From contig CM074511.1 of the NCBI GenBank assembly GCA_037379345.1, positions 49,792,862 to 49,856,861 of the forward strand: DNA of 64,000 bases, read 5' to 3'. This document shows positions 1 through 63,619 of this stretch, one piece after another. Source of the stretch: Perna viridis (lineage: Eukaryota). A program made the translations under genes and the position numbers. The first letter of the stretch is position 1. Every line of letters starts with the position of its first letter. The notes under the pieces are model-generated. The model had not been told where the DNA came from, searched no databases, and saw nothing but the letters and a program-made list of their open reading frames with translations.

Positions 1-280
1 TGGTAACATATTGTATGTTTGGCCATATTTTTTTTTTCTCAATTTATACCCCAGTCAAATAGTAGGTGGTATATTAGAATTATGTTTTCCACCTCATCTA
101 TGTGAATTTCATCACAATTATCTCAATTCTTAATGAATTGATTAATTACATATTTAGTTTGGGACTTTGTATAGATGGGACACAGGTTGCATGCACTTTT
201 GGTTGCTGTCCAATATCTTATATATAACTTCCTGTACTAGTGTGGGTACTACATGTGCAACTTTATATTTGTACTTCCAG

Positions 281-16970: not shown

Positions 16971-17608
16971 TATAGTATATATTTTGTCAGATTTATTTTG
17001 GACTTAATTTTATAATTGATCGGATTATTGATCGGTATTTTATTGTTACTTATTTGTCTCTCTACGAAAGACGGTGATTGTAAGCTTCCGTTCATGTATT
17101 GCATTCCAAAATCGTAGCTTGATCTGCAAAATGTACAAGAAGCGCAGCCAGACTTTCTTTGAAGTGGAAGACCAAATTCGGCAAGGGGACTAGCTGACCG
17201 CTCAAGGCCCCAAGTGGGGGACAGGGGAGCGAAGTCCTCGGAAGCTCCCGGTGTTTGCGCGTTTTATACCCATAAAAGTTAGTCAAAATTAATGCTGAAA
17301 AGGGCTTTACTGCGAGATCGTTTTGTTAAAAATGTTTCTTTTTAATTGTATAATACAAGCAGTGATAAAACTCAAATGAAGAAATTGTCCTCCCAAATTT
17401 GATATCTTTTTTGTATTGTTTTAAAATGCCAATCTCTTCAGCACCTGCATATGAACTTTTCATATCACAACTCAAACGTTATCGAGCTTGTCGAAACTAA
17501 GCAAACTTTTCGTACCTCGCTATAAACTTCTTACAATTACGCTTCTGGGGCGGACATGGTTATGTTGCTACAAGATTGAAATTATCACTACAGAAGTTTT
17601 ATGGTCGA

Positions 17609-17685
17609 CCCGTGCAGGATCGGGTGTCAAAAGAATAGGCCTGCAGCAGCGCTAAGCTTGTCGTAAAAGGCGACTAAACAGTGCT
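17609..17685 (+). ncRNA. Putative structured RNA (H-type pseudoknot + nested stems) at the SINE 5' end; candidate self-cleaving ribozyme, unproven
   Basis: P1 CCCG 17609-12 / CGGG 17621-24. Loop TGCAGG 17613-18 pairs with CCTGCA 17640-45. AGCGCT 17648-53 / AGTGCT 17680-85 encloses GTCGT / GCGAC 17660-74. Pairing-preserving variants occur in copies 3 and 4. Confidence 0.55.
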
Positions 17686-18132
17686 CAGAACCTTAGCCGG
17701 GGGCTGGGGCGCTCTGCCCACAGAGCAACTGGGTTGTGTGCCCCAGGTGGTGGAATGGGGTACCCCTGGTGTGTTACATGCTGGGGTTGTCAGGCTATAA
17801 TACGGAATCCCTGACCGCAAACCATAGTGGTGCACCGTGTTGGGAAAGATGCCACGTTCCTCGCACGTTAAAAAACCCTACTGTGGTATTCTCGCGGAGT
17901 AGGAACAATAGGGCTCCGCCACAGGAGGCTAAATTGCCCGACCCTACCCACCTCTCCCTATTTCCAGGGGCAATCAAAATTTGTCGACCACATTGTCCTT
18001 GTGTCCCATCCCATATTTCATTTCATCATCATTTCATGTTCATTTTATCATCCACTTCATGTTCATCGCCTGAATATAGCTGAAATATTGCTGCTCGGGC
18101 GTTAAACCCCAAGAAACAAACAAACAAACACA
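17609..18132 (+). mobile_element. ~510-bp SINE-like retroposon with structured (pseudoknot) 5' head, copy 1
   Basis: One of six homologous copies. (AAAC)n tail; TSD AAGTTTTATGGTC at 17594-17606 and 18133-18145; inserted in a Penelope-like remnant. Confidence 0.92.
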
Positions 18133-19307
18133 AAGTTTTATGGTCATTATCAAGAACTCATGGATCGTTACGGTCTTTCCATCTGCACCATAAGCACCGA
18201 TTTGTTCAGCGGGTCATATTTTTCCTTCCCTCTTTCTACCCCAGACTTGACTTTTCATGATCGAGCAACTCGACGGGTGCTTCTAGAAAAGCAGAGGAAG
18301 CTTACCCTACCGGTGTACCTGGTCCAAGCTCCCAGATTTTAGTGGAGTCCGAGTTGCTCATTTAATTTTGTTGCTTTTTACGTATTATTTTGGTTATTTT
18401 ATGTTCTTTGTTGTGTGCCGTTTTCCATGTCTGGTCTCTGTCCCTGAATTACATTCCTTTGATTTCCGCTAGAATCTTGGTTCACTTGATTAGTCTTTGT
18501 TCCTTACAGTGGTCTCGCAAATAATTGTATCTCGATTCGGCTTTCATAGTTAACCTGATTTTAAGCTTTAAAAAAACTATATATGTAACATATTCCTTCA
18601 ACTATTTTGAAAAGAGTCTGATACACTTGAAATTTAGAATAGTCTATCAAGTTTTGAAGTCATCATTGCTATCATCATCAATTTGGTAAATTGTTATAGA
18701 AAACCCATACATGTCTAGAGATCAATTAACTTTTGAATAGGTAAGTGTTGCTCATCCTGCATGAGTTTATTTGTGTTCCTTCTATGGGGTCTGATTGTTT
18801 CTATGTTTTTTAAACTCTTATAATGACCTTGAATCTGTGTTTTTGTATGATATAAAGTACTAGAAAATGAATAACGTTGACATTTGACCTCTTCGGGGTC
18901 CAATCTTTAATATTAGTTGACCTATTGCCCTGAAAACCACCTTCGCTATTCATCATTAAATAATTGCGAAAGCCCTTTTTGAAACGACAACTGGTCCACA
19001 ACTGGTCCTCAAAAATGGTATACATTGTATGTCTTTTTTTTCAGACAAACTCGATCCGTCTTTAACTTTGACAAATTCAATAATTCAAATGATGTCTGTA
19101 TGTTACCTTCATGAAAATGGGATTTATAGTTGAAAGACATTATATACCCGTGTCTTTACTCAATCAGGACATAAAGTAAATTAAGAAACAACATAGTAAC
19201 CCCGTACGCGATCGTTTCCACTAATAAATTACCACCTCGTCTTCTTTTCTTCTATATCTCTCTTTATTTTATTTCATTGTTTTTGCAAAATGATGTGGAA
19301 GCTCAGG

Positions 19308-23300: not shown

Positions 23301-26300
23301 TTCAACAAATAGTTGTTACATTTTTTTTTTTCAGAAAAACATTGGGAAGTTATTTTCAAAGTATGGCGAGACCTATTCTTTGTTTTCTCGACTTGCAAAA
23401 ACTGGGGAATATAAATTTGGGTGAGTATTTATTTGTTATAGTCAAATAACCTATTGCTTATTTATGAATATCTTGCAGCCATTTATAAATATACTCTACT
23501 GAATTCACACCATTACACATTCAAACTCAAGAGAGCTAATGTAACTGAATTCTATTGACCAAATAGTGGTAGACACTAGAAATAGAAATTATCTTGCTTC
23601 AATCTTCAGTTGAAAATTTAGTTTTTTGAAATTTACTCTTTAGGTTTGTAAAATACTTTGCTGAAGCTGATGCTGACAAAGCTGTTGCTGAATTGGATGG
23701 CCTGGAGTTTGATGGAAAGAAAATCATTGTTAAGAGAGACTTTAAACAGTAAGGTCTATGATAGTACCATAACTATTGGAAATATTTTTATATATCATCC
23801 GCCTTGGATATATTACCATATTTTGGTATTTGTCTCTTTGAGTATGTTAAGCCATCAATCCAAGTGTATCATTACTCTAAATTTCTTCTAGAAACCCAAA
23901 CGGTCTTTCACCTCTGTGTTTTTGTCTGTCTTCAAAATAAGTATGGACTCTAGATAATTTTCTCAACAGTCCATTATTACTTGGATAGATTTTCAGGTAA
24001 ATAGTTTATTTGGTGTTGGCAAAATAAATTTGTAAGCCTTTATATGTCCTCTGGCTTTAGTTAATTTCAAATTTTTTGGGCTGACATTTTTTATGGAATG
24101 TGTATATTCTAAGGCCAATTGTAGAAGAAATAAAAACTTCTGTAAAGTTACTGCAAACTTAGTTTGAATGAAAAGTCACAAAAATATTACATAAAACATT
24201 ATAAACTGTTGGAATAGGAAGCGCAGGTATAAATTAAATTTTTGATAAAATAATTTAAATCAAATACATTTTTTAAAAATATTTCTGCAATACATCTTTA
24301 AAAGAGTAATCAAGGGAACCAAGGTTATAGCAGTAATCAAAAGAATGTAATCCAGGGACAAAGACCAGACATGGAAAACAGACATACACAACAAAGAATA
24401 TTAAGTAACTAAAATCATACATACAAAGTAACAAAAGTAAATGAGCAACTCGGACTCCACTAAAAACTGGGAGCATGGACCAGGTGCACCGGTAGGGTAA
24501 AGATTGCATTAAAACTACATTCTCTCGTAACAGAACTGGCAGTGGTAAAGATGGAGAAGAAATTAAAGACAAACCAAGAAATAAGCGAAATTTACAGAAA
24601 CCACAGAAAAAGCCTGCTGATCTTGGTAGGTTTGTAATAGAAGTTGTCTGCAGAAAGATCATTAAGATCTTAAAGGAGTCTTAGAACTCTTTGAGGAAGA
24701 TTTCATACCACTCGCAAGGGCGTCACTATAACCCCTGCCTCAAATCTGTATATTTGTTCATCCATGAACAATTGTAATTTCATCTTTCTTAGCTTAATTA
24801 CCATATTTCATATTTGATGCAGAGCTTTATAAAGATGATTTAAAGGTCGTCCTATATTGAATTTCTCCACAAACTTACTTCTATCACAGCTTTGTTCTTG
24901 TTAGTTGGGTGTCTTTTCATATTTTAAGTTCTTCTTAAAGGTTTTTTTTTTTTGTCATTTACTTGAAAAGATATGAAACAATTCAGAGCATCTTTAGCAC
25001 AATGTCCAGTTCAGTTTTTGGATTACCTTACCCAAAGGGCAGTGAGAGCTATTGCCATCTTTATGTAACAGTTGTTGCCGTTACTTTTTCAAACATCTTT
25101 TCCGCTGAAACTACTGAACAGATTGTAACCAAACTTTCCTTGAATGTTCATAGGGTATTTTTAACAATCTGTTTGTGGAGATTTTTTATCTGGCAAAAAA
25201 CATGGCCACTTTTATTAAAAATAGACCATGGAGGTCGAATTGCAGAATTTTTTTAAATAACTCAAAAACAATTGGGTTTAGATAAAATCTTGCAGGGAAA
25301 AATTGTTCAGCATGATGGGATGGACATATGCCAAAATTTACAGAAAGATCCATTGATGGATGGTTGAGTTGTGAGTCCTGAAATTTTAAATTTCCAACTT
25401 TAAAAATCTTCTCCCTTGAGACTACTGGATAAGATTGCAACCAAACATGGCATGAATGATTGTAAGGATATTCATAACAATTTTTGATTTGTCAAAAAAC
25501 ATGGCCACCATTATTAAAAATTGAGGATTTGTGGAAATAACTCTAAAACCATTGGCTTTAGCCAAACAATTAATCAGCATGGGGAGACTGACCCATGCCA
25601 ATATTTTAACAAAGATCTATTGACCGATGTTGAAGATATTGGCCTTGAATGGCCAAAAAAATGACCAAGAGATTTATTTTATAATTTAAAACCAGTTGTC
25701 AAACTAAGATGCTCTCTATTGATTAAATGATCCTTTTGACAATAGTTCAGTAGGATCAAAAGTCCATTGTTGAGTTACTGCTTTATAACATGGCTTAAAA
25801 GACATTTTTAACCAGGTGAGTGAATCAGGCTCTCTTAGAGCCTCTAGTTTATTTTTCGTGATATTTTGAATTTTTTTATTGGATTCCTTTTGAAAATTCC
25901 TGCCTTTTCATGAGCTTGAAGAATTATGCTGAGCAAATTTATTTTATCATTTATTGTTTTTGAGGTAATGAGGTAGTGATTCAAGAGTTCCCTGAACTTT
26001 GTTCTTATATTGAATTTCAAAGTATTGTGCAATATTGTATATAAAAGAGTTGCTGTGTCCATAAGAACTGTAAGTCCTCGTGTTTAAGTCTGTCAGAAAC
26101 TTATATTTTATCCACATTTGAGTTGAAATGTCTGCAGTCGTATCATGCTACACTTGGCAGAGCTTTTTATTAAAAAAATGTTGTTCATTAGATTTCAAAT
26201 TGATGGATTTCAGTACAGCAAATTTTCAACAGAAGTTAATTTTGTTTGGAATTTGAATTTGTATTTTGACCAAACCACTTAAACTGGTACATTGTATTCA

Positions 26301-29300: not shown

Positions 29301-32300
29301 AATAAATTAAAACCATAAAAGTCAGTGACCCCCGATATCGATGTATTTATGGTATTCTATAAATAAACTTGTAAAATAACAACAACATGGATATAAATAT
29401 TCAATGAAACATACATGTATTACAAAAAAAAAACATTTGAAAAGATACAATGCACTGCACAAACAGTCAACATGCTTTAAAAATGAAATGAAGGTAACTT
29501 GCAGACATAGATTAATCATAGTTGTATATTTCCGGAACCAGTTTCCGGAGCAACAACGTCAATTTCCGGTACCTCTGGAAACCGGACCCTCTGAAAACCG
29601 GCTGATTTCATCAGTCCCAGTGATGGCCGTTTACAGAGGTTGCACTGTATACAGTGAAACCTGGTGAAAGTTACAGTTATTTCCGTTTTCTTTCAAGTCT
29701 ATGCCTGTAGATTTTAAATCTGTACCACCAAACTGGTAACTTAGTTCTGTTGGTGAAATAAGGAAAAGGTAGATTTTTTTTAAAACATGAATGTAGTCTT
29801 GTGGGTTATTCAAACTATTACACAGGCCTTTCGTTAAGAGACGGTACCAGGTACTTTTACCGGTCTAAGCTACTGAAAGGTACCTCCAGAATTTAAAATT
29901 TCACATTATGTTTAAAAGAGAAAATGATTAAAAGTACCTCCTACAAAACCAATTGTACTTGCATTGCAAAAAATAAATGAAACCCCTGATTACAATGATC
30001 ATCTCTAAAATCAGTTTAAATATTTTGTAATTTTACTTTAGTAGGTAGTTCTTGTTATGATGTTATTACGGAATCTTAAAGATGGCTTAAAAAGTAATCT
30101 TGACGTAAAGTATGTTTGGCAAAATTGCAAACATTTATTTTGATAGCCATTTTAAAAGGAAGAAAATTTATGGAAATAAAATGTGAAATTTAAAGTATGT
30201 TCTTCCAACATCATCTATGAGAAAAATTAGGAACTACATAAGTTATGATCTACCTTGATTTGATTTGGTATTCATACTGGTGGTATGATCTATATGACTC
30301 CACTATATTAAAATCATGGAAAGAAAGAAAAATAAATTTTATGTTTAAGGAACTTGATAGGATTTGAAATAAGTGTAATTGTCATTAGAATGGTAATAGA
30401 CTTGGGCAACTGTAAGTTCTTTTCTTGTCTGTTTTAGGGTCTGACACTCTGAAAGTACAGTACATAGATTATGGAAATTCAGAGGAAGTTAAAAATGAAT
30501 CTCTGGTGGAGATACCACAGTCACTAGCATCAATGAAACCCATGGCAACCAAGCTTATTCTACATAACTGCTATGCAAATGATCTTTCGGACCAAAAAGT
30601 AAGAGATAAAATCAGTGGATTTACTGGTTTTTGTTCATGTTAAAACTAACATTGATTTCATTAACTGAAAAGTCTTGCTTATACTCTATTTATCTTTTAC
30701 CGATGTGTAAATCAGGCTGTACTTGAATAATAAATAACAATATACCAATATTTGTTTGCAAGCAAACAAGTAGAGTATTATTAATGTAGGGACAATTTTC
30801 TGTTTCTAATAGTAATACATATACTGACTTAGCTTGTTGATAATTGGAAATTACATCCAAATGACTTTCAAAATAATTTGTAGAAAATTTTAAATATGTT
30901 AAATTTCTGTTTGAAAAATTAAACATGGTATATGTATTTTAGAATAAACTTCCAAGGTTGTCATTAAAACAATTGTGATACTTTTTTCACAGGCAATTCA
31001 ATGGGTGAAAGAATTAACAGAAGGCATTGTGGTAGATACTGTAAAGACTGTTCCTCTGAAGGATAATACAGGACATTATGGCATGCTCTATGTGGGAGAA
31101 AATTGTGTAAATGACAATATAAAAGAACTAGGCTTTGCTTACACACGTCCTGCCATGGCCAATAAAACTAATGATGTTGGTGGGCAGGGCTTATTGGGGC
31201 CCGGCAAACTAATGGGTGAGTGAAGATATTTAGGAAGTACTCTTGTTATGTTGGCCAAATTAAATTCTCATGTAACCATTAGAGTGTGTTCAGAATCTTA
31301 ACCTTGTTTTTTATGTCTATATGATTTATACAAGAAGTGTTTTTCATGGTGATGGAGTTTAATGTTATTGACTGAAATTTCCTTCTATGTCATCACTTTA
31401 AATTTTAACATAACTAAATCTGTTTATATTGATACTGGAGGATGCTGATAGAGGGGTAGTACTATTTTGACCCAAAACATGATAAATTAACAAAATGAAT
31501 ATTAGATGTAAGTTTTTATTCTGTCAGCGGTAATTTTTCACTTTTTAATTCATAAGTTTGTGTAAAGGGAGTTAGGGTGAAATGTTTTTCATTGTGAGGA
31601 TGCTCTTTGGTATGGGCGCATTTTGTAGACAAATAAAACAGATTACATAAATAATTGCAGTTAAAACTTGTGTTCTTTTTTACATCAAAGCTAATGTTAT
31701 AACCAAGTCAGTGACCAATGACCAGATAATTGGAACAGGGGGAGGATATGCAGATAGTGGGGGAGGGGGTTATGGAGATATGACAGGGAGTCCAATATTT
31801 GGTGGAAAACAGAATGGAGGAAGACTGACTCCTAAGTTTAACAGGTAATCTAACTCCGCTTACATACTTATAATGAAATGACAAAATAATGGATTACAGC
31901 ACAAAAATTGAAATGTGAATAGATATGATGTTTACATTTAATTGAGTTGAAGTAAAAAGAACTGAGATGGATTTTTTTATTCAGTACAGTGAAGTTTTTA
32001 AATTTTCAAACAAAAATTCTTAAAAATTAAAAAATAAACTTTTCTAAGGTCCTTTTTTTTTTTTTTTTTTTATAATGTACATCCCAGTGCAGGTCCGGGT
32101 GTTAAAAGAATAGGCCTGCAGCAGCGCTAAGCTTGTTGTAAAAGGCCTCTAAATAGTGCTCAGAATCCTAGCCAGGGGCTAGGGAGCTCTGCCCACAGAG
32201 CAACTGGGATATGTGCCCCAGGTGGTGGAATGGGGTACCCCAGGCGTGTTACATGCTGGGGTTGTCAGGCTATAATACGGAAAACCTGACCGCAAACCAT

Positions 32301-35300
32301 AGTGGTGCACCATGTTGGGAAAGATGCCACGTTCCTCACTGTCCTGGAGTAGGAACCATAGGGCTCCGCCACAGGAGGCTAAATTGCCCGACCTTACCCA
32401 TCACTCTCTTTTTCTAGTGGCAATCAAAATTTTTCGACCCCATTATCCTTGTGTCCCATCCCCTTTTTTGCATTTCATCATCATTTCATGTTCATTTTAT
32501 TATCCATTTCATGTTCATCGTCTGAATATAGCTGAAATATTGCTGCTTGGACGTTAAACCCCAACAATCATTATAATGTACAAACTCTTTAAACCAATAT
32601 TTTCAGAATTTTATCTCGAACAAAAAAACATGCCTATCAAAATATATCAAGTATATATCTTTTGTAAAAGAGCCTGGTTTTAACACTATACATGACCCAA
32701 ATATTGATGAGAATGATTTGATAGTTACATGTAGATATGATCTCATCATTCTAACAATTAACACCAGACTTTTCACATAGTAAGGAATTACTGTACATGT
32801 TATACTCTATAATTTGTAGAGATACAGGTAGTCCAGACCCAACAGGTGAAGTAGAGAGACTAAGGCAAGAGTTGGCTAAGAAGAATATGCAGCTTCAACA
32901 TGTTTTGTTGAATAGGTATGTATAAGTTTTGGTAAGTTTAATAATTAGTAAAAATTTTATCTAATATCAAGATTATGTATTGTAATAAAGTTGTCATATT
33001 TGCAGTAAATTTCATTAAACACATATATTTTATATATATCTTTTAATTCTTATTTCATGATCATGTGAATCTACCTGAAAAATAAACCAGAGATTACTCT
33101 GTAAAGCTTGTCTGAATGAAACAGATTGAAATATTTGTCTCTGGCTAGTATTCAGATTTATTCATGTTCAAATACATTTAAACTGATATTGCACATTCAA
33201 GAGTTGTCTTGTTTAGACATCTTGTATTGTTTCAATGGTTAGGTGTACAAACATCTTACTTATAAATTTACATGACATATTTTTTGCATTAGTTATAACA
33301 AATTTTTTTTTTTTTATTTCAGACCAGAATCTAGTGGTTTTGATCCTACACCCGAGATGGATAGATTAAGGCAAGAATTGGCAAAAAAGACTGCTCAACT
33401 CCAGCAAGCTTCCATGACCAGGTGTGTTAAAAATAACATGTAGCACCTTACATTTATTTATTCCATCCACAATATTTTTATATTATATTTTGGGCTTTAC
33501 TATACACTGTCAATTTGTTCGACACTTATTTATGCAGAACAGGTATAGATAATATTTTTTGTAGATTTATTGGAGTTGTAATGTTGACAGTTACTGTTGT
33601 CTTTTGCAAGTCCGTTTGATATGTCGTGTTTTTATTAGACATTAGTAGGGTTAGGTGTTGTATGATGTCTTACTGAAGGTGCCCTAATTGTCCTTTTCAA
33701 CCAACCATCCCTGGGTTAAATTTTCTTTAATTTGATCCGTAGAACACACTGTTTAGTACATTTTCACTAGAAACATCCTATGCATCATTGTTATGTTGCA
33801 GATCTGTTACTGAAACCCCAGACTTGTTTGAAATCATATCACATAATTATTCTTTTTCAACAGGAATGACGTCAACACAGATAATGTTAAGGCAATGCAA
33901 GCTCAATTAAACAAGAAACAAAGGGAACTTGAAAAGACTAAAACAGAACTATCAAGCAAAAACTCACTTCTACAGCAACTTCAGATACAGAAAATAGAGG
34001 TGTGGTATAGTAACTTTCAACAAAGACCAGTTTCAATTACTTGAATATCCTCAGTCTTTTTTTATATGGTGAATTTGATTTCTGCAGCACTAGGTTGTTT
34101 ATTATTTCAGTCACAGATGTTAATTTGAATACATATGTATAATAGTTTATCATATGTTCAGATGGCCAAGTTAGCAACATGAAAAAATATATATAAATCA
34201 AAGTATGCAAAATGTCTTATAAAGAAAAATATTTTGTTTTGATAATATGTCATTATGCTGATTGTTATTAAGCAAATATGGAACCACTAGACGGGTACCA
34301 TCCAATATCCAAAATTCAGGGAGACTTCACTTCTCCCCCTGAGAAAAATAGGGAGAAGTTTCAAATATCAAGGAGACTTCTCAGTTTGTGCAAGTTTCAT
34401 TAAATTTTGAATGATGTAATCATATAATAACATGTTTTTTTGAGCAACTTCATCTTTCTAAGACTGCAAATAGACAAAAAAGATATTAATATTAACTAAT
34501 GTATCTGATATTTTTTGTTAATTAAAAGACATTAAATTATTATAAAATTTCACATCTAATCAATCTGATGTCTAACAACTTGTCATTTACACATGCACCA
34601 CAGTTCATTCGTTCAATAACTTAAGATTCATATAGTCTTCTCTTTTTTCAATCCTTCCAGATTTTCAAGGCCTTGGCAAAGTCAAAGTTTTTCATTGAAG
34701 GACCATCTTTTGAAATTCTCATCAAGTCATTCTCTGAACTATTGTTTAAATTGGTTCTCAACCTTGACTTGGTTTGATTTTGGGTAGAGAATCCTCTTTC
34801 TCATGTTGGTAGAAGTGTGCAGCACTGAACAAGTTTTACAATATTTGGCATTATAGCTTCATATTCCATGCCAAGTTTTTCACAAATTTCATTAAGGGAG
34901 GAAGTTTGAAAAGAACCTGTAACAAGCCTTTTGTATTGTTTATATTCCATAGGCTTTTGTTCTTTGTCAATTCCTTGGATGGCAAAATGATCAGCTAAAC
35001 ACTCCGGTTTCCAAATGTTGCCAACTCTCCTTTTTGTGTGCAGAAGTAATGAGAAGAGGCTGCAATACTTGCATTTTTTTCTATCAAATCATTCTCTTGA
35101 AAACAATCTTTTAAATTGTTCACGATGTTGTCTATATATTGTGGCATAATAGATCTGAGGATGTTTTTCTGCTGTGAAAAGAATCTGACTTGAAATGCAA
35201 TATGTCCTGCTTCAATCTCTTCATGATCTTCACATTTCTCAAAGCCATCCATGTTAGTTACAATGGCTTCTTGAACAATTGATCTTCTACTTTCATTGTC

Positions 35301-38300
35301 AGGTCGCTTGTATGTAACATCTTCCCCATCCATTGTAATAAATTCCTCCAGTTTTTCTACATAGATGCCTTCTGCCTCTGAAATTATGAAGAACTTCACA
35401 GGTACTTTCCACTATTGGTGTAATTTTACTCAGGTCCCAATCCTTTGTTTGAAAAATATGACTCAATCTACCCAGGAATGGCAAAATGTCCATCAGCATA
35501 TGAGTGATTGCAATGAAACTGTACTGGGAAACTTCTGCATAAATCCCCCTTGCAGCTTGATTGGCAGTTCCTTCAAGCTCAAGGGCTATAAGAAGGGCAG
35601 GGTAAGTCCTATATATCACTTCTACTGAGTTTTGAAGACTTAACCACCTCACAGAGTGAATTTGAGCAAACTTTAGAGTAGGAAGGTTTAACACCATTTG
35701 AATTTCCTTAAGATTATATGATCTAAGTGCAGATCCACTGAAGTAAAAGAAAATGTTTGCCACTGTGTCAGAGTATTTCTTCAATTGAGGGATAGATTTT
35801 GATGCTTGTGAGGCAGCAAGGGCACATTGCTGTGCTGCACAATGAATCCCTACTAAAGCTGGGCTGAATTCCTTGAGCCTTACAATCACTCCATTTTGCC
35901 TTCCTGTCATGATGCTGGCACCATCAGTTCCATCACCAATAAGTTTTGATACATCTAAACCCTTGACTTTTAGTTCTGTTACCACATGATTTACAATGGT
36001 CTCTGCATCTGCTTTTGGAGTAGAAATTTCAATATTGCTGAGGAACTGTCTTCAGTTGTCTTTCATGTAGGTATTGAGCATACAACAAAAGTCTCTTTTG
36101 ATTTCCACGTTCTGTGCTTTCATCTGAAGTTATAGAAAAATTTCCAGTGTTTGTGATATTTTCATCAATATTGACTGAAATCACTTTTGAACATGCACTT
36201 TGAAATTCTCCAACACTTTTTGAACTTAAATAAGAATTTGCTTCTCTCAATGTTTGACAGGCTATTTCACTAATTAAACTGATAATGTGGGGAAATTCTT
36301 CTTTTGGTAGCTCTCTCTTTGCAAAGAAAAAAAAACTTACAGGACGCATGTCGCATATGGTTGGTAGTTTTTGCTGTTTTTTTTTTTGTGATCTCGGGGA
36401 TATGGATTGTCCATATTAACAGCTCTATGCAAATTACAGTGCCATTTCTTATCAGCACCATTATTACCATTCAAAAGAATTTTGCATAATTTCTTTGGAA
36501 AATTTCTTCCTTGGCAACTCAATCGCATTTTCATCAAACTTTCGCTTTCCACCAGGGTTCGGTGACTCGCCTGTCAGCCACGCATGTATAAACATTTAAT
36601 TTTCAGTGTACATTTTATTTTTAGTGTACAATGTTCGTTTAATCAATGAATGATAAATTTTAATTTTCAGTAACTATTTATTTGTTAACTAAAACAAAGG
36701 ATAATAAATTTATAGTTTATTATGTTTATTGTCACTTCGGGCCCCATGTGGGTCTGGGTGTTGAAAGAATAGGCCCACAGCAGTGCAAAACTTGTTGTAA
36801 AAGGTGACTAAATAGTGCTCAGAACCCTAGCTGGGGGCTTTGGCGCTGTGTCCACAGCAACTGGGATGTGTGCCCCACGTGGTGGAATGGGGTATCCCTG
36901 GCATGTTACATGCTGGGGTTGTCAGGCTATAATACGGAAAACCTGACAGCAAACCATGGTGGTGCATTGTGTTGGGAAAGATGCCATGTTCCTCGCATGT
37001 TCAAGAACCATTGTGTGGTATTCTTTCTGAGTAGGAACTATAGGGCTCCGCTACAGGAGGCTAAATTGCTCGACCCTACCCACCTCTTCCTATTTCCAGT
37101 GGCAATCGAAATTTGTCAACCCCATTATCCTCGTGTCCCATCCCGTATTTCATTATCATTTCATGTTCATTTTATCATCCATTTCATGTTCATCGCCTGA
37201 ATATAGCTAAAATATTGCTGCTCGGGCGTTAAACCCCAACAACCGATCAATCTGTCACTTCGGGATGAGTTCTGATCAACTGATGTTACGCAGTCAGATC
37301 CTTTGATGTTGACATGTACAGATAGCGGTAACATTTTCACAGTCAACATTTATATATTAATGGTATTAAGTGTAATCTTTTATTAATTTAAGTGTAAAAA
37401 TTTTTTTCAATAACTTTGACATTGTATTGGTAGTGACAGGTGTATTGTGTATTTTCATTAATGTTAGCGTAAAGTTCCGGTCGAGTACTCAATGGGAGAT
37501 CATATGAGTGTAAGTAGCAGGGCGGAAACAGGTGTAATGACCTGCTATGAATTGTCTCGTTTTAGCTCTGAAAACACACAATAAAGTTATATTTAAAGAA
37601 TCACCGATTTTCTACTAGATTTTCCTTTTAGATTTTGAAAAATAAAAGGGGAATGTGTCTGATCTTAAGGGCAACTTTTAACTTCTCTTTCGTGGTAATA
37701 TACGTTGAAGTTTGAAACCAAAAAGTGACTATTTCACCTGAGTCGCCCCTAGGATGGTCCTTGCACTAAAGACATTTTCAAGTCCTTAGGTAGATGTAAT
37801 GAAACTTCAGATTCTGTTTTCTATTTATTTCAGTTACCCCAAGTGACAGAACTATGTAATCAGGTTAGAAACTTGAGGTAAGGTGTAAAATGTCATTGTG
37901 GTAAAAATACAACTATTTGCAAGTTAGAAAATTTATACAATAATTACTTAATAATAAACAGGTCTGCATGATACATGTGTTTTAATACAACATTCATTAC
38001 TATCAAAGGAAGGTTTAAATATTGTACCCCTACTCAGCGAGTGGTATATTGGAATCACCATTTCCGTCATTCCGTCCAAATTTCGTCACAATGTTCTCGG
38101 ATCCCAATGAATGGATTAATTTCTAATTAGGTGTAGGGCTTCATGTAGATGGACCTATGTTGTAAGTGACTTTGGGTGCTGTCTGATATTAACTTCCTGT
38201 ATGAGTAGGGGTATCCCTGGCATAATAACACATGCATCTTCATGTTAGGAGTCGGTTGGATCCAAGTTGTATAAGGGTTTCATTATAGTCCTCTTAACTA

Positions 38301-41300
38301 ACTTTCATTTAGTGACATAATGATTTCTGTCTGTTTATATGTCCACTCATCAATCGACAGTCATTGTGGAGACAACTCTTTGACTGTCAGATGTTTTTGA
38401 AATTTTATAGTGTAGTTTTGATGGGATATATATTTGAACATGCCAAAAAGGGATTTCAAGTTTGAACAGAGATAAGGGACTGGAAATATTTTTAAAATTT
38501 GAATTAAAACAGAGGCCAGCGACATACAGCTATTTTAGCAATATAATGTTAATGTTGAACATTTCAATTTGCTATCTTCAGATCTCAGTTCCCTGCTGGC
38601 CAGAAAAGTTTATTAGATGATGCCATCAGTATTGCCCAGTCAGAAGACCGAATAACTATTGGAACAGTAAATACATTGCAACCTGCTGTCTCACTGTTGA
38701 CTCGATACAAACTTATACAGAAAGAAATCTCTAATTGTACTGATAAGGTAAAATACGAAGCTATCACGTACTATTAGATTGTTAATGGCAAACTTATATT
38801 TACATGTTGAATGCATTAAAATCAAGTTGAGTTGAATAGTACATTAGTCAGTGGTATATAAGGTCTTCTCAAAGTGTGCTGTGAGGTCAGATTGCCTTAT
38901 GGGAAAGAAAGTGAAATGCCTATAAATGTCCAAAATGCGGTTCCTGTTCTGTTCCATATTAATGGCTTAAAGGGGTATATAGCTATTTCTAATTGATCTA
39001 CTTTATAAAGTTACTAAGGATATCCCCTGCTCTTATGGAAGGTTGTTATTACATTATTTACTTGCTACTGCTTGTTATTAAAGTCATTAAAATTAAATGG
39101 TTTTCCTTTAACATTATGTTGTACATTTTAGGCTGAATTGGACAGTATGATCAAAACAAGAGATGAAGCGAGAAATGAATTATATGAGAAATCCCAGGAA
39201 TGTGTTGAACAACTGAGTGCTTTACCTTTAGATCAAAGATACCAGGAAGTGCAGGTATTACTGTTTAAAAGACATGTTTGTTCTAATAGCAACTGTTTAA
39301 TGATGTGTCTACTGAATTAATTTTGGAAATTTTCAACTGATATATATCTCAAGTTTCAGTCCTTTGATTGATTTTTATTATAATTTGTGAACAGACTCAA
39401 TTTAGGAAAGGCATATAAGTAATTCTATTATACTGCATGTTGTCATGGAAACAATGCTCTTCCACTCATTTGAAATTTTTTGTCACTAACTTTCTGTTAT
39501 AAATTTTTTTCTGACTGACTTTGCTTTGTATTTATTCACTGCCACAGATAGTGGAATGGTATTATGCATTTCCCTCTGTTTTGATTGACAGATATATATA
39601 TATCCACCAAAGCATCCTATGGTAGTTTCCAGATAACAACTTGAAATCTAATCAAGTGGTGTTTTTTGTTGTTGTAAAAACTTATCACGATTGTAAAAGT
39701 ATTTAAAAGCAAGATATTCAGCACAATTTTATTTGTTTATTTTAGATACACTGTTTTGAGCATTTGTCTTCCCCTTTTTTCGATGGATGATAACATAAGA
39801 AAAGATTTGAAGGATTTTATTCAAACCTTGCACATACATTTAGTACTTTTCAGTATATATTGTATCCATATTTGCCACTACTAAGAGTTTGACCTGTGCA
39901 GGTGTGAAGCAGGGCCAGGGTTCTCAATAAGTGCTGGTGACCAGCGATTTCGCCGTCTACTTTGACATTGGTGAAAAAAATTGCGTCAGAAACCTTTGAT
40001 TGTGGTGTTTATTGTAATGCAGATTAATTTCTTCGATAACTTCATTTTTTTTTGTCGTGATCGGCAGTACGAATAAACAAACTTTAATCTTGGTTAATTT
40101 GGCGCTTTTGTAATGGACATGATCCGCTTTTTTTTTTCAAATGCAGTACTGATTCCGTATCACGGGATTCGGTATGTTGGAAGTTTTATAATCAATTCAG
40201 CGCTTGGTTCAGGCCTGAGGGCCCTCAATTATGCCACCTACTTTTAATTTTCTTCCACCTACTTTAAAACTTATTGAGAACCCTGCAGGGCCCTGAACAT
40301 TTTTTGAACTTTTGCCATTCCCTCATGGGTTGGGGTGATACTGACTATATGTGCACAGAATATTGCCCTGCAATGAGCCAGGGTATCATTTAATATCCTA
40401 TAAGCCCTATTTTTTCAATTTTAGGATACAGAAAACAAGTTATTGAAGGATTATGCCCCATTTTTTACTTTCAATGTTCACAACAACCTTTCATTAGAAG
40501 AAATGGTACCAGGCTTCAATGACTGGAAGGTATTTATTATCTTATATTTTACCCTGTAATACAGTATACTAGTTAAACCTGTTACAACAGAACCTTTGAT
40601 AAACTGCTAATTTCTATAAAGCTGACATCTTCTGAAGTCCCTCCATATCAATCTGAATACTTATTGAACTTGTGTAAACCTAACACTTGTTTCCCTGTGC
40701 AGGTGCAGGTGTCAACAGAATAGGCCTGCAGCAGCGCTAAGCTTGTCGTAAATGGTGACTAAATAGTGCTCAGAAACCTAGCCGGGGGTTAGGCGCTCTG
40801 CCCACTGAGTAACTGGGATGTGTGCCCCAGGTGGTGGAATGGGGTACCCCTGGTGTGTTACATGCTGGGGTTGTCAGGCTATTATACGGAAAACCTGACC
40901 GCAAACCTTGGTGGTGCACCGTGTTAAGAAAGATGCCATGTTTCTGGCACGTTTAAGAACCCTGCTGTGGTCTTCAATAGTAGTAGGAACCGTTGCGCTC
41001 CGCCACAGGAGGCTCAATTGTCCGACCCTACCCATCTCTCCTTTTTCTAGAGACAAACAAAATTTGTCCCTGTTGTTTTTGTTTCCCATCCCTTGTTTCA
41101 TTTCATCATCATTCATGTTATTTTATCATCCATTTCATGTTTCACGCCTGAATATAGCTGAAATATTGCTGCTCGATTGATAACCCCAACAATCAATCAA
41201 TCAATCTAACACCTGTCTAAAGTGGACAGGTCTCTGCAGTCAAAAGGGATTTTGTTTAGACAAGTTTCATTGTAGTAATGAGAATAAATCAATGTTGTGG

Positions 41301-57161: not shown

Positions 57162-60100
57162 ATGAAGTTCACATGTAAGTAACAGATGTAATAGCTTGTA
57201 AAATTGAGGACTGGTTCAAACAGTGGTTAAATTGTCTCTGGCGTGACTTCCCCGCCTCCATAAAGCATGAAGTTGATTTAAAAATATTTAACTCTTCTTG
57301 ACAAATGAGATTGATTGATTGATTGATTGTTGGGGTTTAACGTCCGAGCAGCAATATTTCAGCTATATTCAGACGATGAACATGAAATGATGATGTAATG
57401 AAAAAAAAACAAAGGGATGGGACACAAGGATAATGGGGTCGACAAATTTTGATTGCCACTGAAAAAAGGAGAGATGGGTAAGGTAGGACAATTTAGCCTC
57501 CTGTGGCGGAGGGCAAATGTTCCTACTCCTATCGAATACCACAGCAGGGTTCTTTAACGTGCAAGGAATGTGGCATCTTTCCCAACACGGTGCACCACTA
57601 TGGTTTGCGGTCAGGTTTTCCGTATTATAGCCTGACAACCCCAGCATGTAACACGCCAGGGGTACCCCCATTCCACCACCGGGAGCACACATCCCAATTG
57701 CTCTGTGGGCAGAGCGCCTAGCCCCAGGCTATGTTTCTGAACACTACGTAGTCGCCTTTTACGACCAGCTTAGCGCTGCTGCAGGCCTATTCTTTTAACA
57801 CCCGGACGTGCACGGGGCTAAATAACTACACATATTAAGCATCTACATCTACATTGGCGACAATGTCTATGGATATTTAGAGAACTCATACAAGACGGCT
57901 AATTCTGTGAGCTAAGTTGATTTTATAACTACACATATTAAGCATCTACATCTACACTGGCGGCAATGTCAATGGATATTTAGAGAACTCATACAAGACG
58001 GCTAATTCTGTGAGCTAAGTTGATTTTATAACTACACATATTAAGCATCTACATCTACATTGGCGGCAATGTCAATGGATATTTAGAGAACTCATACAAG
58101 ACGGCTAATTCTGTGAGCTAAGTTGATTTTATAACTACAAATATTAAGCATCTACATCTACATTGGCGACAATGTCAATGGATATTTATAGAACTCATAC
58201 AAGACGGCTAATTCTGTGAGCTAAGTTGATTATACATAATTTTTTTTAGATTTCCTTATCTTTTTTATCGAGGTGGAAATATGTATGTATAATACTATGT
58301 TTTTAAGTTCTTCGTTCTAAAAATTGTGATACCAATAGTTCTTAAAATATATATTACAAATCGAAAAAGGAATTACTTAATTTCTAGACTGACCACTATA
58401 CAAGAAAGCATTTCTTAAAAAATTTCTAGTTTTTTTTTTTTTTTTAAGAATAGCTGTTATATTGTTTTTGACCCGTCCGTCTGTCCGTCAGTCCGTCCGT
58501 CAGTCCATCATCAGTTTTACGGACTTTTCTTCTAAATGCTTGCAGATATTGACATGATTTTTGGTATATAAGTTCACCATGATAAGTTACAGGTCAAGTT
58601 TAACTTTCGTTCAGCTTCGATGATTTTTACCGAAATTACGGGCCTTGAACTTAGCAAAATTAACAGAAAAAAGTTTTCCGGGCATTTTTTTCTAAACGCT
58701 TGCAGATATTGACATGATTTTAGTACAGAAATTCACCATAAAAAGTTACAGGTCAAGTTCGACTTTCGTTCCGCTCCTGATGGTTTTTACCAAAATCACG
58801 GGTCTTTAACTTAGCAAATTCACAGAAATTTTTTTTTCTGAACGCTTGCAGATATTGACATAATTTTTGGTATATAAACTCACCATGATAAGTTACAGGT
58901 CAAGTTTACGTTTTGTCCCGCTCTGATGGTTTTTACCGAAATTACGGGCCTTTAACTTAGCAAAATTCACAGAAATAACAGTTTTCCGGACTTTTTTCGA
59001 AACGCTTGTAGATATTTACATGATTTTGGTATATAAGTTCACCATGATATGTTACAGGTCAAGTTTACGTTTCGTTCCGCTCTGATGATTTTAACCGAAA
59101 TTACGGGCCTTGAACTTAGCAAAATTCACAGAAAAAAAAGTTTTCGGGACTTTTTTTTTCTAAACGCTTGCAGATATTGACATGATTTTTAGTATAGAAA
59201 TTCAACATGATAAGTTACAGGACAAGTTCGTAGTTGTTCCACTCCAACGATTTTTACCAAAATTACGGGTCTTGAACTTAGCTAAATTTACAGAAATAAC
59301 CGTTTATCGGACTTTGGTATATAAGTTCACCATGATAGGTTACAGGTCAAGTGTACGATTTGTTCCGCTACGATGATATTTACTTTGGATTAACTAAAAC
59401 TCAAAGAAATCACAGTCTGGAGTTTGAAACTACCATTCTGAGTAACAGAATTTAGTTAGAAGATGAAGGTCTAAAGCCAAAAAACACTCTTATTCCTTTT
59501 TATTGGGGTCCTTCTACATGTTTTTCTCCTACAAATTTATTTGATTATCTAACATGGGGACGCGTGGGTATGTGAGCGCCCACTAATTAAGGTTCTTTAA
59601 TTATGGACAATTTTCACGTTTAGCCGCTGGCCTTGAATGTTTTTCGTGTAGTGGAGTAGAAGATGCTAGAGAATGTAATCATCGCATTCAGTGTGCAGAT
59701 GGTGAGGTATATATTCCATATAGCAGGGAGTTAAACTTCATCTAGTATTACATCTACAGAGTCACTAGTACATTGGTTATGATACAGGAGTAACAAAACA
59801 AAAAACAACGGTTTTTACTTAGTCAAAGGAAATGAAGGTGGTAATTTGACAGACCTAATAAGATTTGAATTAATCGTGAAGTCTAATAAAATACTGTCTA
59901 TGTCGGCTTCTAGTTCAAATGGTTCAAGTCAACATCAACAGAATTAAACATGAATATGACTAAATATGTCAAAGTACAAAAAAACAAAAATAAATCAACC
60001 AAGTGACATATTGATTAAAAAAAACCGTAAGCTTGACCAGACATGTATATCTATTACAGCCATGTCATTGGTATTCATACTACCTTCTCCATAAAAGCCT

Positions 60101-62801: not shown

Positions 62802-63619
62802 CAGGGGCGTAGCTGCCTATACGCAAATACGCAGTTGCTTACTTTCGGAAAAATTAACAAAAAATAAAAACACACATTTTAAAGATGAAATAAAGGTTAT
62901 TTATCACATATGCATACCATGAACGTAGTATAGGCTCTGAAAAACTGGCTCCAAAATCGTTAAAATTCAGGAGGGCTTTGTTTGTTTGTTTGTTTGTTTG
63001 TTTGTTTGTTGGGATTTAACGTCCGAGCAGCAATATTTCAGCTATATTCAGACGATGAACATGAAATTGATGATAAAATGAACTAGAAATGATGATGAAA
63101 TGAAAAAGGGATGGGACACAAGGACAATGGGGGGTCGATAAATTTTGATTGCCACTGGAAATAGGGAGAGGTGGGTAGGGTCGGGCAATTTAGCCTCCTG
63201 TGGCGGAGCCCTATGGTTCCTACTCCGGGAGAATACCACAGTAAGGTTCTTTAATGTGCGAGGAACGTGGCATTTTTCCCAACACGGTGCACCACTATGG
63301 TTTGCGGTCAGGTTTTCTGTATTATAGCCTGACAACCCCAGCATGTAACACGCCAGGGGTACCCCATTCCACCACCTGGGGCACACATCCCAGTTGCTCT
63401 GTGGGCAGAGCGCCCTAGCCCCCGGCTAGGGTTCTGAGCACTATTTAGTCGGCTTTTACGACAAGCTTAGCGCTGCTGCGGGCCTATTCTTTTAACGCCC
63501 GGACCTGCACGGGTTCTTAGGGCTTTGCCTTGCCGGACTCACTGGGGGCCTTGAGCAACCCCCCAAGACCCCTCGCCGTAATTTTGCGTACAACTAAAAC
63601 AGGCCTAGCTACGCCCCTG
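62802..63619. mobile_element. MITE (same family as 19308-19518) carrying SINE copy 6
   Basis: TIRs CAGGGGCGTAGCT / AGCTACGCCCCTG; shares the subterminal GACCCC..GCCGTAATTTTGC. Confidence 0.8.
62981..63513 (-). mobile_element. SINE-like retroposon copy 6, nested in a MITE
   Basis: Reverse-complement homology; (TTTG)n tail on the + strand; TSD AGGGCTTTG at 62972-62980 and 63519-63527, with 5 extra nt at the element 5' end. Confidence 0.92.

What the first reader, a model, noticed from the sequence alone, without database searches (positions are those of the whole stretch)
17609..17685. Candidate ribozyme-headed SINE: six retroposon copies all start at a pseudoknot instead of a tRNA head
Seen: six ~510-bp copies (17609+, 32082+, 36742+, 40692+, 57817-, 63513-) with (AAAC)/(AATC) tails, five of them with 9-13-bp TSDs, which indicates LINE-mobilised insertion. 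None is 5'-truncated; all begin within about 1 nt of the same CCCG stem. I find no Pol III A/B box (no GTTCRA). The first 77 nt fold as P1 CCCG/CGGG, whose loop UGCAGG pairs with a downstream CCUGCA after an invariant AGAAUAGG. This is followed by AGCGCU/AGUGCU enclosing GUCGU-AAAAG-GCGAC and conserved GCUU and UAA joiners. Established: some non-LTR elements and their short derivatives (R2 and R2-derived SIDEs, RTE, L1Tc) use 5' HDV-like ribozymes to cut themselves out of host transcripts. The helix order here does not fit HDV, hammerhead or twister, and is only loosely pistol-like (loop pseudoknot followed by AAUAG). Inference: this may be an unclassified self-processing RNA that defines the 5' end of a promoter-less SINE. 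I recall similar heads on other invertebrate retroelements but cannot verify that.
Basis: partly seen in the sequence, partly recalled or inferred. Interest (0 to 1): 0.9.

Follow-up and report, generated by a model that had tools for sequence, protein, structure and literature searches.

The report
Structured non-tRNA head of abundant retroposon
The flagged stretch is the folded 5' leader of a very abundant LINE-dependent short retroposon; its RNA fold, probably including a pseudoknot, is conserved across species, but nothing yet shows that it cuts itself, and it resembles the "LINE-promoter" SINEs already described in molluscs.

Summary
The window has six copies of a ~521-bp retroposon with (AAAC)n or (AATC)n tails, and five have target-site duplications (TSDs). 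The genome holds at least 16,000 head-bearing copies. 5'-truncated copies do exist genome-wide: about 28% of tails lack a head, and hundreds of copies are only the tail.

The head is not tRNA, 5S, 7SL or snRNA, and it matches no Rfam family, including pistol, twister, HDV-like, hatchet and hammerhead. The proposed fold is supported. Relatives recovered from marine metagenome assemblies (down to 72% identity) keep helices B, C and E through compensatory changes: 11 of 34 pairs, against 3.7±1.6 in shuffles. The pseudoknot partner, helix A, rests on a single covarying pair.

No evidence bears on self-cleavage, because only assembled contigs were available, not raw RNA reads. The closest known kind is the LP-SINE (Matetovici 2016), whose ~70-bp head is shared with LINE 5' UTRs. 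Homology to that head could not be tested here.

Verdict: a real, structured 5' module of a Pol III-independent SINE-like element; the ribozyme reading remains open (about 12%). Many first-reader notes elsewhere in this genome flag the same family; the notes shown carried no follow-up result.

The parts
17594..17606 (+). Left target-site duplication of copy 1 (13 bp)
   Evidence: The same 13-mer recurs at 18133-18145.
17607..18132 (+). Copy 1 of the retroposon, full length. It starts GA-CCCG (GA subfamily) and ends in an (AAAC)n tail.
   Evidence: It has 22 mismatched or gapped alignment columns against the family majority sequence, of 521 nt.
17609..17624 (+). Hairpin A: CCCG (17609-17612) pairs with CGGG (17621-17624). 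Its loop carries the 5' strand of helix B (17613-17618).
   Evidence: The closing pair covaries: G-C becomes C-G in L063 and A-U in the 36742 copy. The other three pairs are invariant or wobble.
17613..17645 (+). Helix B: TGCAGG (17613-17618) pairs with CCTGCA (17640-17645). It is pseudoknotted with A. The linker 17625-17639 is A-rich and ends in GAATAGG, which is unchanged in 8 of the 10 aligned lineages (L051 altered, L062 partly deleted).
   Evidence: Four paired variants occur in different lineages: TGCAGG/CCTGCA, TGCGGG/CCCGCA, TGTGGG/CCCACA and TGCAGA/TCTGCA.
17648..17685 (+). Two-tier hairpin: helix C (AGCGCT 17648-17653 with AGTGCT 17680-17685) encloses helix D (GTCG 17660-17663 with CGAC 17671-17674).
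   Evidence: In helix C, 3 of 6 pairs show changes on both sides and 94.6% of cells are paired. In helix D, 97.4% are paired.
17691..17726 (+). Hairpins E (17691-17709) and F (17711-17726), which complete the GC-rich head.
   Evidence: E has 3 pairs with changes on both sides (CTAGCC/GGCTAG becomes CTGACC/GGTCAG in L053). F is conserved without compensatory change.
18067..18132 (+). 3' recognition module: a stem-loop (18067-18101), TTAAACCCCAA, then the (AAAC)n tail.
   Evidence: 757 tail-only copies begin at the base of this stem-loop; the five non-SINE-flanked loci inspected each have their own TSD. This region is the best-conserved part shared with distant families.
32082..32570 (+). Copy 2 (TSD TTATAATGTACA at 32070-32081 and 32571-32582), with an internal 26-bp deletion.
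36742..37252 (+). Copy 3, an older variant with helix B as TGTGGG/CCCACA (12-bp TSD TGTCACTTCGGG).
40692..41205 (+). Copy 4 (11-bp TSD with one mismatch).
57309..57818 (-). Copy 5. It starts GCCCCG, and no TSD was found.
62981..63515 (-). Copy 6 (9-bp TSD CAAAGCCCT). Five non-matching nt lie between the TSD and CCCG.

Best explanation
Positions 17609-17685 are the core of the 5' module of one copy (17607-18132) of a ~521-bp non-autonomous non-LTR retroposon. The family has roughly 2x10^4 copies, about 1.4% of this 723-Mb genome.

The element has three parts:
(i) a GC-rich, non-tRNA head (nt 1-~125) that folds as an RNA into hairpin A / helix B (an H-type pseudoknot with an A-rich linker ending in GAAUAGG), a two-tier hairpin C/D, and hairpins E and F;
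(ii) a middle domain shared with distant families;
(iii) a 3' stem-loop plus an (AAAC)n or (AATC)n tail, which recruits a partner LINE's reverse transcriptase for target-primed reverse transcription.

Most likely the head is the kind of module described for LP-SINEs: a short 5'-terminal piece of the type found at the start of LINE 5' UTRs. On this reading, it sets transcription initiation at G1 without Pol III, and as a folded 5' leader it is needed in cis for productive full-length retroposition (binding by the partner's protein and/or protection of the 5' end).

Shown: copy structure, TSDs, the exact 5' end, the absence of any small-RNA head, and maintenance of the fold by compensatory change.
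Inferred: Pol II initiation, LINE-UTR origin, and the cis role of the fold.
For: - Family, TSDs and tails.
- Copy numbers: 16,465 heads and 22,757 tails.
- Exact 5' end at G1, with a subfamily-specific second base.
- No tRNA, 5S, 7SL, snRNA or any Rfam family, even at E<=10 on 152-nt heads.
- Internal T5 and T4 runs about 100 nt upstream of the tail argue weakly against Pol III.
- Relatives from other samples (L051-L053, L061-L063; 72-85% identity) keep the helices. 11 of 34 pairs have changes on both sides, against 3.7±1.6 in shuffles (0 of 500). 89.9% of cells are paired, against 32-43% when partners are slid.
- Two mini-elements (L105, L108) keep only head nt 1-83 plus the last ~110 nt. They share the breakpoint but have different TSDs.
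- Literature: mollusc LP-SINEs have a ~70-bp head shared with the 5' ends of Nimb and RTE LINEs, TSDs, tandem-repeat tails and an AATATA hexamer upstream of the tail, which this element also has (PMC4758252).
Against: - Homology of this head to the published LP head could not be tested, because no LP or LINE sequences are held.
- No LINE carrying this head was found in the genome. Exclusion-pattern searches gave only 3, 6 and 3 junctions of head to foreign sequence. The nine inspected as sequence were deletions, deletion derivatives or a nested insertion, apart from two (L106, L109) left uninterpreted; the three were seen only as matched strings that look like small deletions.
- A promoter alone does not explain RNA-level covariation.
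- No initiator-like motif is evident at +1.
- No RNA 5'-end data exist.
- Helix A, and therefore the pseudoknot, rests on one covarying pair. One of its two events could be paired CpG decay.
Confidence: 0.5

Rival explanations
1. The head is a self-cleaving ribozyme of an undescribed class. It cuts immediately 5' of G1 and releases the element from read-through host transcripts, doing what HDV-like ribozymes do for R2/RTE/L1Tc and twister variants do for Perere-3.
For: - The 5' end is exact, and a compact pseudoknotted fold sits directly against it.
- Unpaired blocks conserved in most lineages (GAAUAGG, GCUU, CUAAA, CAGA) lie between covarying helices.
- There is no Pol III head.
- Precedents exist: PMC8501958 and PMC5786205. 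The LP-SINE authors themselves point to Pr77, which is both promoter and ribozyme.
Against: - There is no match to any ribozyme family in Rfam, even at E<=10 on 152 nt.
- No conserved HDV-like solution was found in a descriptor scan, and there is no hammerhead core.
- A pistol-like layout would cut about 50 nt inside the RNA, not at its 5' end.
- New ribozyme classes are rare.
- In the runs laid, labelled only as guessed RNA, contigs run from the flank into the head. These are contigs, so this counts for little.
Confidence: 0.12
2. The head is a 5'-end-protecting or processing signal read by host enzymes. Either the pseudoknot stalls a 5'-3' exonuclease (xrRNA-like), or a host endonuclease recognises the fold. 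Trimming of longer transcripts would then leave G1 as the end.
For: - An H-type pseudoknot with an A-rich third loop sits 2 nt from the RNA end. This is the general layout of exonuclease-resistant RNAs (own knowledge).
- The 5' end is exact without a recognisable promoter motif.
Against: - There is no match to xrRNA families in Rfam.
- Helix A is only weakly supported.
- There are no RNA end data.
Confidence: 0.08
3. The head derives from an unrecognised lineage-specific small RNA gene and carries an internal Pol III promoter, making this an ordinary SINE with an unusual head.
For: - New head types (snRNA, 28S, GC-rich heads of unknown origin) keep being found (PMC5786205).
- The high copy number and high share of full-length copies are SINE-like.
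Against: - There are no A or B boxes and no Rfam or ARAGORN hit.
- T5 and T4 runs lie inside the element upstream of the tail needed for mobilisation.
- Exclusion-pattern searches found the head joined to non-SINE sequence at only 12 places. The nine inspected as sequence were deletions, deletion derivatives or a nested insertion, apart from L106 and L109, which were left uninterpreted; the three were seen only as matched strings.
Confidence: 0.1
4. The fold has no function. The helices are palindromic leftovers, and the apparent covariation is chance among related, decaying copies.
For: - Only 10 lineages were compared, and the structure was derived from these same sequences.
- Several changes are CpG transitions that yield wobble pairs.
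Against: - 11 pairs show changes on both sides, including non-CpG double changes shared by independent copies from different samples (the two L053 copies, and L063/L064).
- Slid controls give 0-3 such pairs.
- Head sequence diverges faster than the middle domain while its pairing is kept.
Confidence: 0.05

Closest known systems
LP-SINEs (LINE-promoter SINEs) of gastropods and bivalves, Matetovici et al. 2016 (PMC4758252)
   Same: - Short TSD-flanked retroposons with tandem-repeat tails and no small-RNA head.
- A short (~70 bp) 5'-terminal module.
- A body that can carry a conserved SINE domain.
- An AATATA hexamer upstream of the tail.
- Proposed Pol II rather than Pol III transcription.
- Relatives occur in marine invertebrate DNA.
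   Different: - Sequence homology of this head to the LP head (Nimb-17_LMi, I-3_DR, RTE-9_CPB, Lsa_2, Sgl_LP) is untested here.
- No fold, pseudoknot or covariation was described for LP heads.
- No LINE with this head was found in this genome.
Bipartite non-autonomous LINEs / SIDEs with 5' HDV-like ribozymes (R2 SIDEs, RTE derivatives, NARTc/L1Tc Pr77)
   Same: - The 5' end and 3' end modules are kept and the interior is dispensable.
- The 5' end is exact.
- The 5' module is about 77 nt.
   Different: - There is no HDV-like nested double pseudoknot and no Rfam hit.
- The parent LINE is unknown.
- The middle domain is SINE-like and shared with other families.
Pistol ribozyme
   Same: - A short P1 hairpin whose whole loop forms a 6-bp pseudoknot with a strand about 15 nt downstream.
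- An A-rich linker ending in AAUAG.
   Different: - No P2 helix was identified, and there is no G-U cleavage junction after P3.
- The A run is not conserved in L063.
- The covariance model does not hit.
- Pistol cleaves near its 3' side, which could not create this 5' end.
Twister variants at the 5' end of Perere-3 (PMC8501958)
   Same: - A ribozyme placed at the 5' end of a non-LTR element with TSDs abutting the cleavage site.
- A hairpin followed by a UAAA-type linker, then a strand that pairs with the hairpin loop.
   Different: - The 5' half of a twister (cleavage loop, P2 strand, T2) has no room in this element.
- There is no hit to the Rfam twister models.

Membership tests
Classical Pol III SINE (tRNA/5S/7SL head) | Head derived from a small RNA, with internal A/B (or 5S) promoter boxes | tested here: not met
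   ARAGORN finds nothing in six loci. Rfam gives no tRNA, 5S, 7SL or snRNA hit at E<=10. GTTCRA is absent from the majority sequence.
Classical Pol III SINE (tRNA/5S/7SL head) | LINE-type 3' tail, TSDs, high copy number | tested here: met
LP-SINE | Short 5' head that is not a small RNA, TSDs, and a tandem-repeat tail preceded by a poly(A)-signal-like hexamer | tested here: met
   AATATA lies in the 3' stem-loop about 45 nt before the repeats.
LP-SINE | Head homologous to the ~70-bp 5' end of Nimb-17_LMi / I-3_DR / RTE-9_CPB | not testable with these tools
   The sequences appear only in a figure and in Repbase, and no supplement is held.
Bipartite non-autonomous LINE / SIDE | 5' and 3' ends identical to those of an autonomous LINE in the same genome | tested here: inconclusive
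   Searches for the head joined to non-SINE sequence gave 3, 6 and 3 places. The nine inspected as sequence were deletions, deletion derivatives or a nested insertion, apart from L106 and L109, which were not interpreted; the three were seen only as matched strings that look like small deletions. A LINE with fewer than about 40 full-length copies (my rough estimate) would be missed.
HDV-like ribozyme | P1 starting at +1, P3/L3 directly before the P1 3' strand, P1.1, P2 closing, catalytic C in J4/2 | tested here: not met
   The descriptor scan found only weak solutions that need a ~170-nt insertion. L063 gave none. No Rfam HDV-type hit.
Pistol ribozyme | P1 loop forming a pseudoknot with a downstream strand | tested here: met
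   Helices A and B.
Pistol ribozyme | P2 and P3 with the conserved G-U cleavage junction, and a match to the family model | tested here: not met
   Inspection of the alignments identified no P2 pairing. No Rfam hit.
Twister / hatchet / hammerhead | Match to the family covariance model, or the CUGANGA core for hammerhead | tested here: not met
.
Any self-cleaving ribozyme | Site-specific self-scission giving 5'-OH and 2',3'-cyclic phosphate | not testable with these tools
   Only Logan contigs were available, not raw RNA reads.

The most novel reading that the evidence does not exclude
The ~85-nt pseudoknot-plus-hairpin head is a new class of self-cleaving (or otherwise 5'-end-generating) RNA that cuts exactly before G1. 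If so, promoter-less retroposons could free themselves from host transcripts. If the head is the same module as the LP head shared by Nimb and RTE LINEs from insects to vertebrates, the class would be widespread in animals.
Probability: 0.12. Interest if true: 0.85.

Novelty: new member of a known kind. Interest (0 to 1): 0.5.

Why it matters
Non-autonomous retroposons without a Pol III head must still make an RNA with an exact 5' end. Known solutions are a borrowed LINE promoter or a 5' ribozyme.

This family gives a large, young and cleanly bounded test case: about 2x10^4 copies, some within 1.5% of the family majority sequence. It has an ~85-nt head whose fold is demonstrably under selection. 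A few simple bench assays on this head would decide between the promoter, ribozyme and exonuclease-block readings. They might also explain why a ~70-bp 5' module is shared among unrelated LINE clades, a question Matetovici et al. 2016 left open.

For annotation, the element's 135-codon open frame produces spurious proteins in metagenome catalogues: 85 clusters were found here.

Tried and rejected
- Phage-collection blast: irrelevant, no match.
- Rfam at gathering threshold on the whole window, and at E<=10 on 581-nt and 152-nt stretches: only chance snoRNA and miRNA hits.
- ARAGORN: nothing.
Sampling therefore relied on genome-search loci.
- Pattern scans: viral contigs and GTDB genome contigs gave nothing. 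The JGI metagenome scan gave one true copy (L056) and four chance hits.
- Paper search for sequence strings: nothing.
- The look-up of sequencing runs and read laying: all runs are Logan contigs labelled only as guessed RNA. The element is present at very high summed depth in organisms A and B, but no molecule starts or ends can be read, so there is no verdict on RNA 5' ends.
- Search for the partner LINE by requiring non-SINE bases next to the tail: it returned 5'-truncated tail-only copies, not a LINE.
- Search for the head joined to foreign sequence: deletions, deletion derivatives and a nested insertion where inspected; L106 and L109 were left uninterpreted, and the three places were seen only as matched strings.
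- Covariance model R1 of nt 1-88, run on 364 kb of local loci: it found only the family itself. The distant families (L085-L088) have other heads.
- RNAalifold consensus: it proposes a different long-range pairing with no net covariation bonus (6 of 33 compensatory pairs). I rejected it in favour of the manual model (11 of 34).
- An acceptor-like closing helix between the 5' CCCC and downstream G runs: the partners are not conserved in L053 or L063.
- The 135-codon open frame (nt 91-495): I rejected it as a gene. It has no Pfam match to any ORF tried, all homologues are other copies of the element, and the frames shift between copies.

Full report
**What is in the window.**
- A blastn search with 17609-18130 finds six copies, at 17609+, 32084+, 36756+, 40694+, 57816- and 63513-, with 86-100% identity. 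A MAFFT alignment with flanks shows a shared ~510-520-bp unit ending in (AAAC)n or (AATC)n.
- The window is 33.6% G+C. The first 88 nt of the unit are about 50-55% G+C.
- Exact boundaries, read off the junctions, are 17607-18132, 32082-32570, 36742-37252, 40692-41205, 57818-57309 and 63515-62981.
- Five copies carry 9-13-bp target-site duplications (TSDs). The 57818 copy has none.

**Genome-wide picture.**
- The window lies on a 72.6-Mb contig of a 723-Mb assembly. Matches fall on contigs numbered up to C15; the fourteen whose lengths are listed span 27-73 Mb.
- A 27-mer from the head occurs 16,465 times and a 27-mer from the 3' stem-loop 22,757 times, allowing up to 2 mismatches. Reversed-pattern controls give 0.
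- That is about 2x10^4 copies, or roughly 1.4% of the genome.
- The copy closest to the majority sequence (L009:1499-2021) differs from it at 8 of 521 positions, so the family was active recently.

**The 5' end.**
- In 52 full-length copies I searched for TSDs. With TSDs of 9 bp or more, the nucleotides between the TSD and the CCCG stem are GC (16), GA (5), GG (2), C (2), and scattered others.
- The GA copies tabulated all carry TGTC in place of TGTT at the start of the A-rich linker, although that variant also occurs in some GC and GG copies.
- Only one copy shows an extra G.

**5' truncation.** Truncated copies are real.
- About 28% of tails lack a head by the counts above.
- Local loci contain copies beginning at consensus positions 12, 49, 381, 413, 448, 458 and 459.
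- A pattern that demands non-SINE bases just upstream of the 3' stem-loop finds 757 places. The twelve fetched loci include four SINE copies with a small change just upstream. In five of the other eight I read a TSD of about 8-12 bp.
- Insertions are therefore bimodal: full length, or little more than the 3' stem-loop.

**What the head is not.**
- Rfam gives no match at gathering thresholds on the whole window.
- It gives only chance hits at E<=10 on 581 nt and on the 152-nt heads of L009 and of the distant relative L063.
- No tRNA, 5S, 7SL, snRNA, pistol, twister, HDV-type, hatchet, hammerhead or xrRNA family appears. ARAGORN finds nothing.
- A descriptor scan for the HDV-like core (P1 from +1, P3/L3 abutting the P1 3' strand, P1.1) gives only weak solutions that need a ~170-nt insertion. 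L063 gives none. There is no CUGANGA motif.
- The majority sequence has T5 and T4 runs about 100 nt before the tail. This argues weakly against Pol III. The T5 run is followed by C, a context reported to weaken termination (PMC4758252).

**Relatives outside this genome.**
- The element has a 135-codon open frame (nt 91-495) that stays open in many young copies. I used it only as a handle for searching.
- A protein search returned 40 short "proteins" from metagenome assemblies, and a profile search returned 85 clusters.
- Fetching their contigs gave these relatives:

  | Locus | What it holds | Identity |
  |---|---|---|
  | L051, L061 | one full-length relative each | 82-84% |
  | L053 | one full-length copy | 85% |
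  | L053 | a second copy, first 280 nt only | 81% |
  | L062 (Tara sample) | partial copy, nt 1-292 | 82% |
  | L063/L064 | full-length relative with its own 11-13-bp TSD and a degenerate AATC-type repeat tail | 72% |

- One source of L063/L064 is a marine biofilm metagenome.
- More distant families (L085-L088, ~64% identity) share only nt ~177-520 and have other 5' sequences. In L087 the TSD defines a different head.

**The fold.** I aligned ten lineages (A4) and counted pairs for a model with these helices, in consensus numbering:

| Helix | Positions | Finding |
|---|---|---|
| A | 3-6 with 15-18 | only the closing pair covaries: G-C to C-G in L063, and to A-U in the 36742 copy |
| B | 7-12 with 34-39 | four paired versions |
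| C | 42-47 with 73-78 | 3 of 6 pairs changed on both sides |
| D | 53-56 with 64-67 | 97.4% of cells paired |
| E | ~84-102 | CTAGCC/GGCTAG becomes CTGACC/GGTCAG in L053 |
| F | ~104-119 | conserved, no compensatory change |

- Overall, 89.9% of cells form standard pairs, against 32-43% when partners are slid by 1-3 columns.
- 11 of 34 pairs show changes on both sides, against 3.7±1.6 in 500 shuffles (0 of 500 reach 11) and 0-3 in slid controls.
- The four versions of helix B are TGCAGG/CCTGCA, TGCGGG/CCCGCA (both L053 copies), TGTGGG/CCCACA (the 36742 copy; CCCACA also occurs in L051 and L061), and TGCAGA/TCTGCA (L063/L064).
- The A-U change in helix A could be two CpG decays. The pseudoknot is therefore plausible but weakly supported.
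- Its geometry resembles the pistol P1/pseudoknot (my own knowledge of that structure): the hairpin loop is used almost entirely for a 6-bp helix, followed by an A-rich 15-nt third loop.
- The unpaired block GAAUAGG, which ends that loop, is unchanged in 8 of the 10 aligned lineages (altered in the decayed copy L051, partly deleted in L062).
- RNAalifold alone prefers another long-range pairing with no net covariation bonus.
- The single-sequence MFE of 132 nt is -54.4 kcal/mol, z = -2.2.

**Is the head shared with another element?**
- Requiring non-SINE bases directly after hairpin F, after helix C, or after helix B gives only 3, 6 and 3 places genome-wide.
- The nine places inspected as sequence were small or large internal deletions or a nested insertion, apart from L106 and L109, which I did not interpret. 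The three places from the last search were seen only as matched strings that look like small deletions.
- Two of the inspected places (L105, L108) are mini-elements: head nt 1-83 joined to the last ~110 nt, with the same breakpoint and different TSDs. Exactly two such junctions exist.
- This hints, on two copies only, that head plus tail suffice for retroposition.
- A covariance model of nt 1-88 finds only family members in 364 kb of local sequence.
- No partner LINE was identified. By my rough estimate, a LINE with fewer than about 40 intact full-length copies would escape these searches.

**RNA evidence.** All runs that hold the sequence are kept as Logan contigs and are only guessed to be RNA. 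Laid on L009:1200-2300, the element shows very high summed depth in organisms A and B, and some contigs run from diverse flanks into position 1499-1504. Contigs cannot show molecule ends. So there is no information on 5' ends or their chemistry.

**Comparison with what is known.**
HDV-like ribozymes head R2, RTE, L1Tc and their short derivatives (PMC5786205), and twister variants head Perere-3 (PMC8501958).
- The closest described kind, however, is the LP-SINE of gastropods and bivalves (PMC4758252). These are TSD-flanked short retroposons with tandem-repeat tails. Their ~70-bp head is shared with the extreme 5' end of Nimb-clade and RTE LINE 5' UTRs from locust, zebrafish and turtle.
- The authors proposed that this head is a Pol II promoter. 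They explicitly compared it with Pr77 of L1Tc, which is both promoter and ribozyme.
- The present element fits that description in form, including an AATATA hexamer ahead of the tail. Sequence homology to the LP head could not be tested because those sequences are not held.

**Verdict.** The fold is real at the level of helices B, C/D and E, and probably includes the A/B pseudoknot. The element is a Pol III-independent SINE-like retroposon.

| Reading | Probability |
|---|---|
| Head is an LP-type 5' module: initiation at G1 plus a folded leader needed in cis | ~0.5 |
| New self-cleaving RNA | ~0.12 |
| Unrecognised small-RNA / Pol III head | ~0.10 |
| Exonuclease block or host processing signal | ~0.08 |
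| Fold has no function | ~0.05 |

Many first-reader notes elsewhere in this genome describe the same family. None of the notes shown carried a follow-up result, and they did not change my reading.

Noticed in passing
G000 genome-wide, e.g. L090, L096, L097, L099, L100 (around position 1500 of each locus): Hundreds of tail-only insertions, about 60-70 nt long, consist of just the 3' stem-loop plus the repeat tail. They start at the base of the stem. In the five inspected loci with non-SINE upstream sequence, each has its own TSD of about 8-12 bp. Reverse transcription seems to stop or switch template preferentially right after the stem-loop.
   Followed up: partly
L105:~1446-1720 (-) and L108:~1446-1720 (-): Two mini-elements consist of head nt 1-83 fused to the last ~110 nt. 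They share the same breakpoint but have different TSDs, and the junction has only these two copies in the genome. A deleted copy may have retroposed once.
   Followed up: yes
Consensus nt 91-495; window 17736-18083, 36868-37200, 63048-63386(-): A 110-135-codon open frame inside the element is called as a protein in public metagenome catalogues (85 clusters at E<=0.001). It has no Pfam domain and shifts frame between copies, so it is an annotation artefact, not a gene.
   Followed up: yes
L085/L086 (JGI), L087, L088 (ENA), L054 (NCBI GCA_029782575.1): Distant families (~64-74% identity) share only the middle domain and the 3' stem-loop/tail (consensus nt ~177-520), including a ~40-nt highly conserved block. 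Where it can be read (L087), the 5' sequence is different. This looks like a SINE superfamily with a conserved central domain in marine invertebrates. I could not tell whether the domain is a named one (Nin-DC, MESC, Meta and so on).
   Followed up: partly
L053:973-1744: In a related species' contig, a copy sits directly upstream of an open frame that looks by eye like a retroelement-type RNase H domain (YTDGSK...SDS). It is probably an insertion into a LINE or other retroelement. Its relation to the partner LINE is unknown.
   Followed up: no
G000:C10:10.66-11.05 Mb and C5:28.66-28.78 Mb: On C10, copies recur in two runs of three at about 26-28-kb spacing (six in all). On C5, three tail-only copies have identical flanks. 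These point to large tandem or segmental duplications that carry the element.
   Followed up: no
L101:~1380-1560(-), L101:~190-560(-): One copy has head nt 1-119 joined directly to the tail, and another has nt 1-~205 joined to the tail. Each has intact TSDs. They are either internal deletions or products of internal priming or template switching.
   Followed up: partly
window 382-717, 24273-24662, 34995-35985, 52751-53236: The longest non-repeat ORFs in the window have no Pfam match. The window appears to be intergenic or intronic and rich in repeats.
   Followed up: partly
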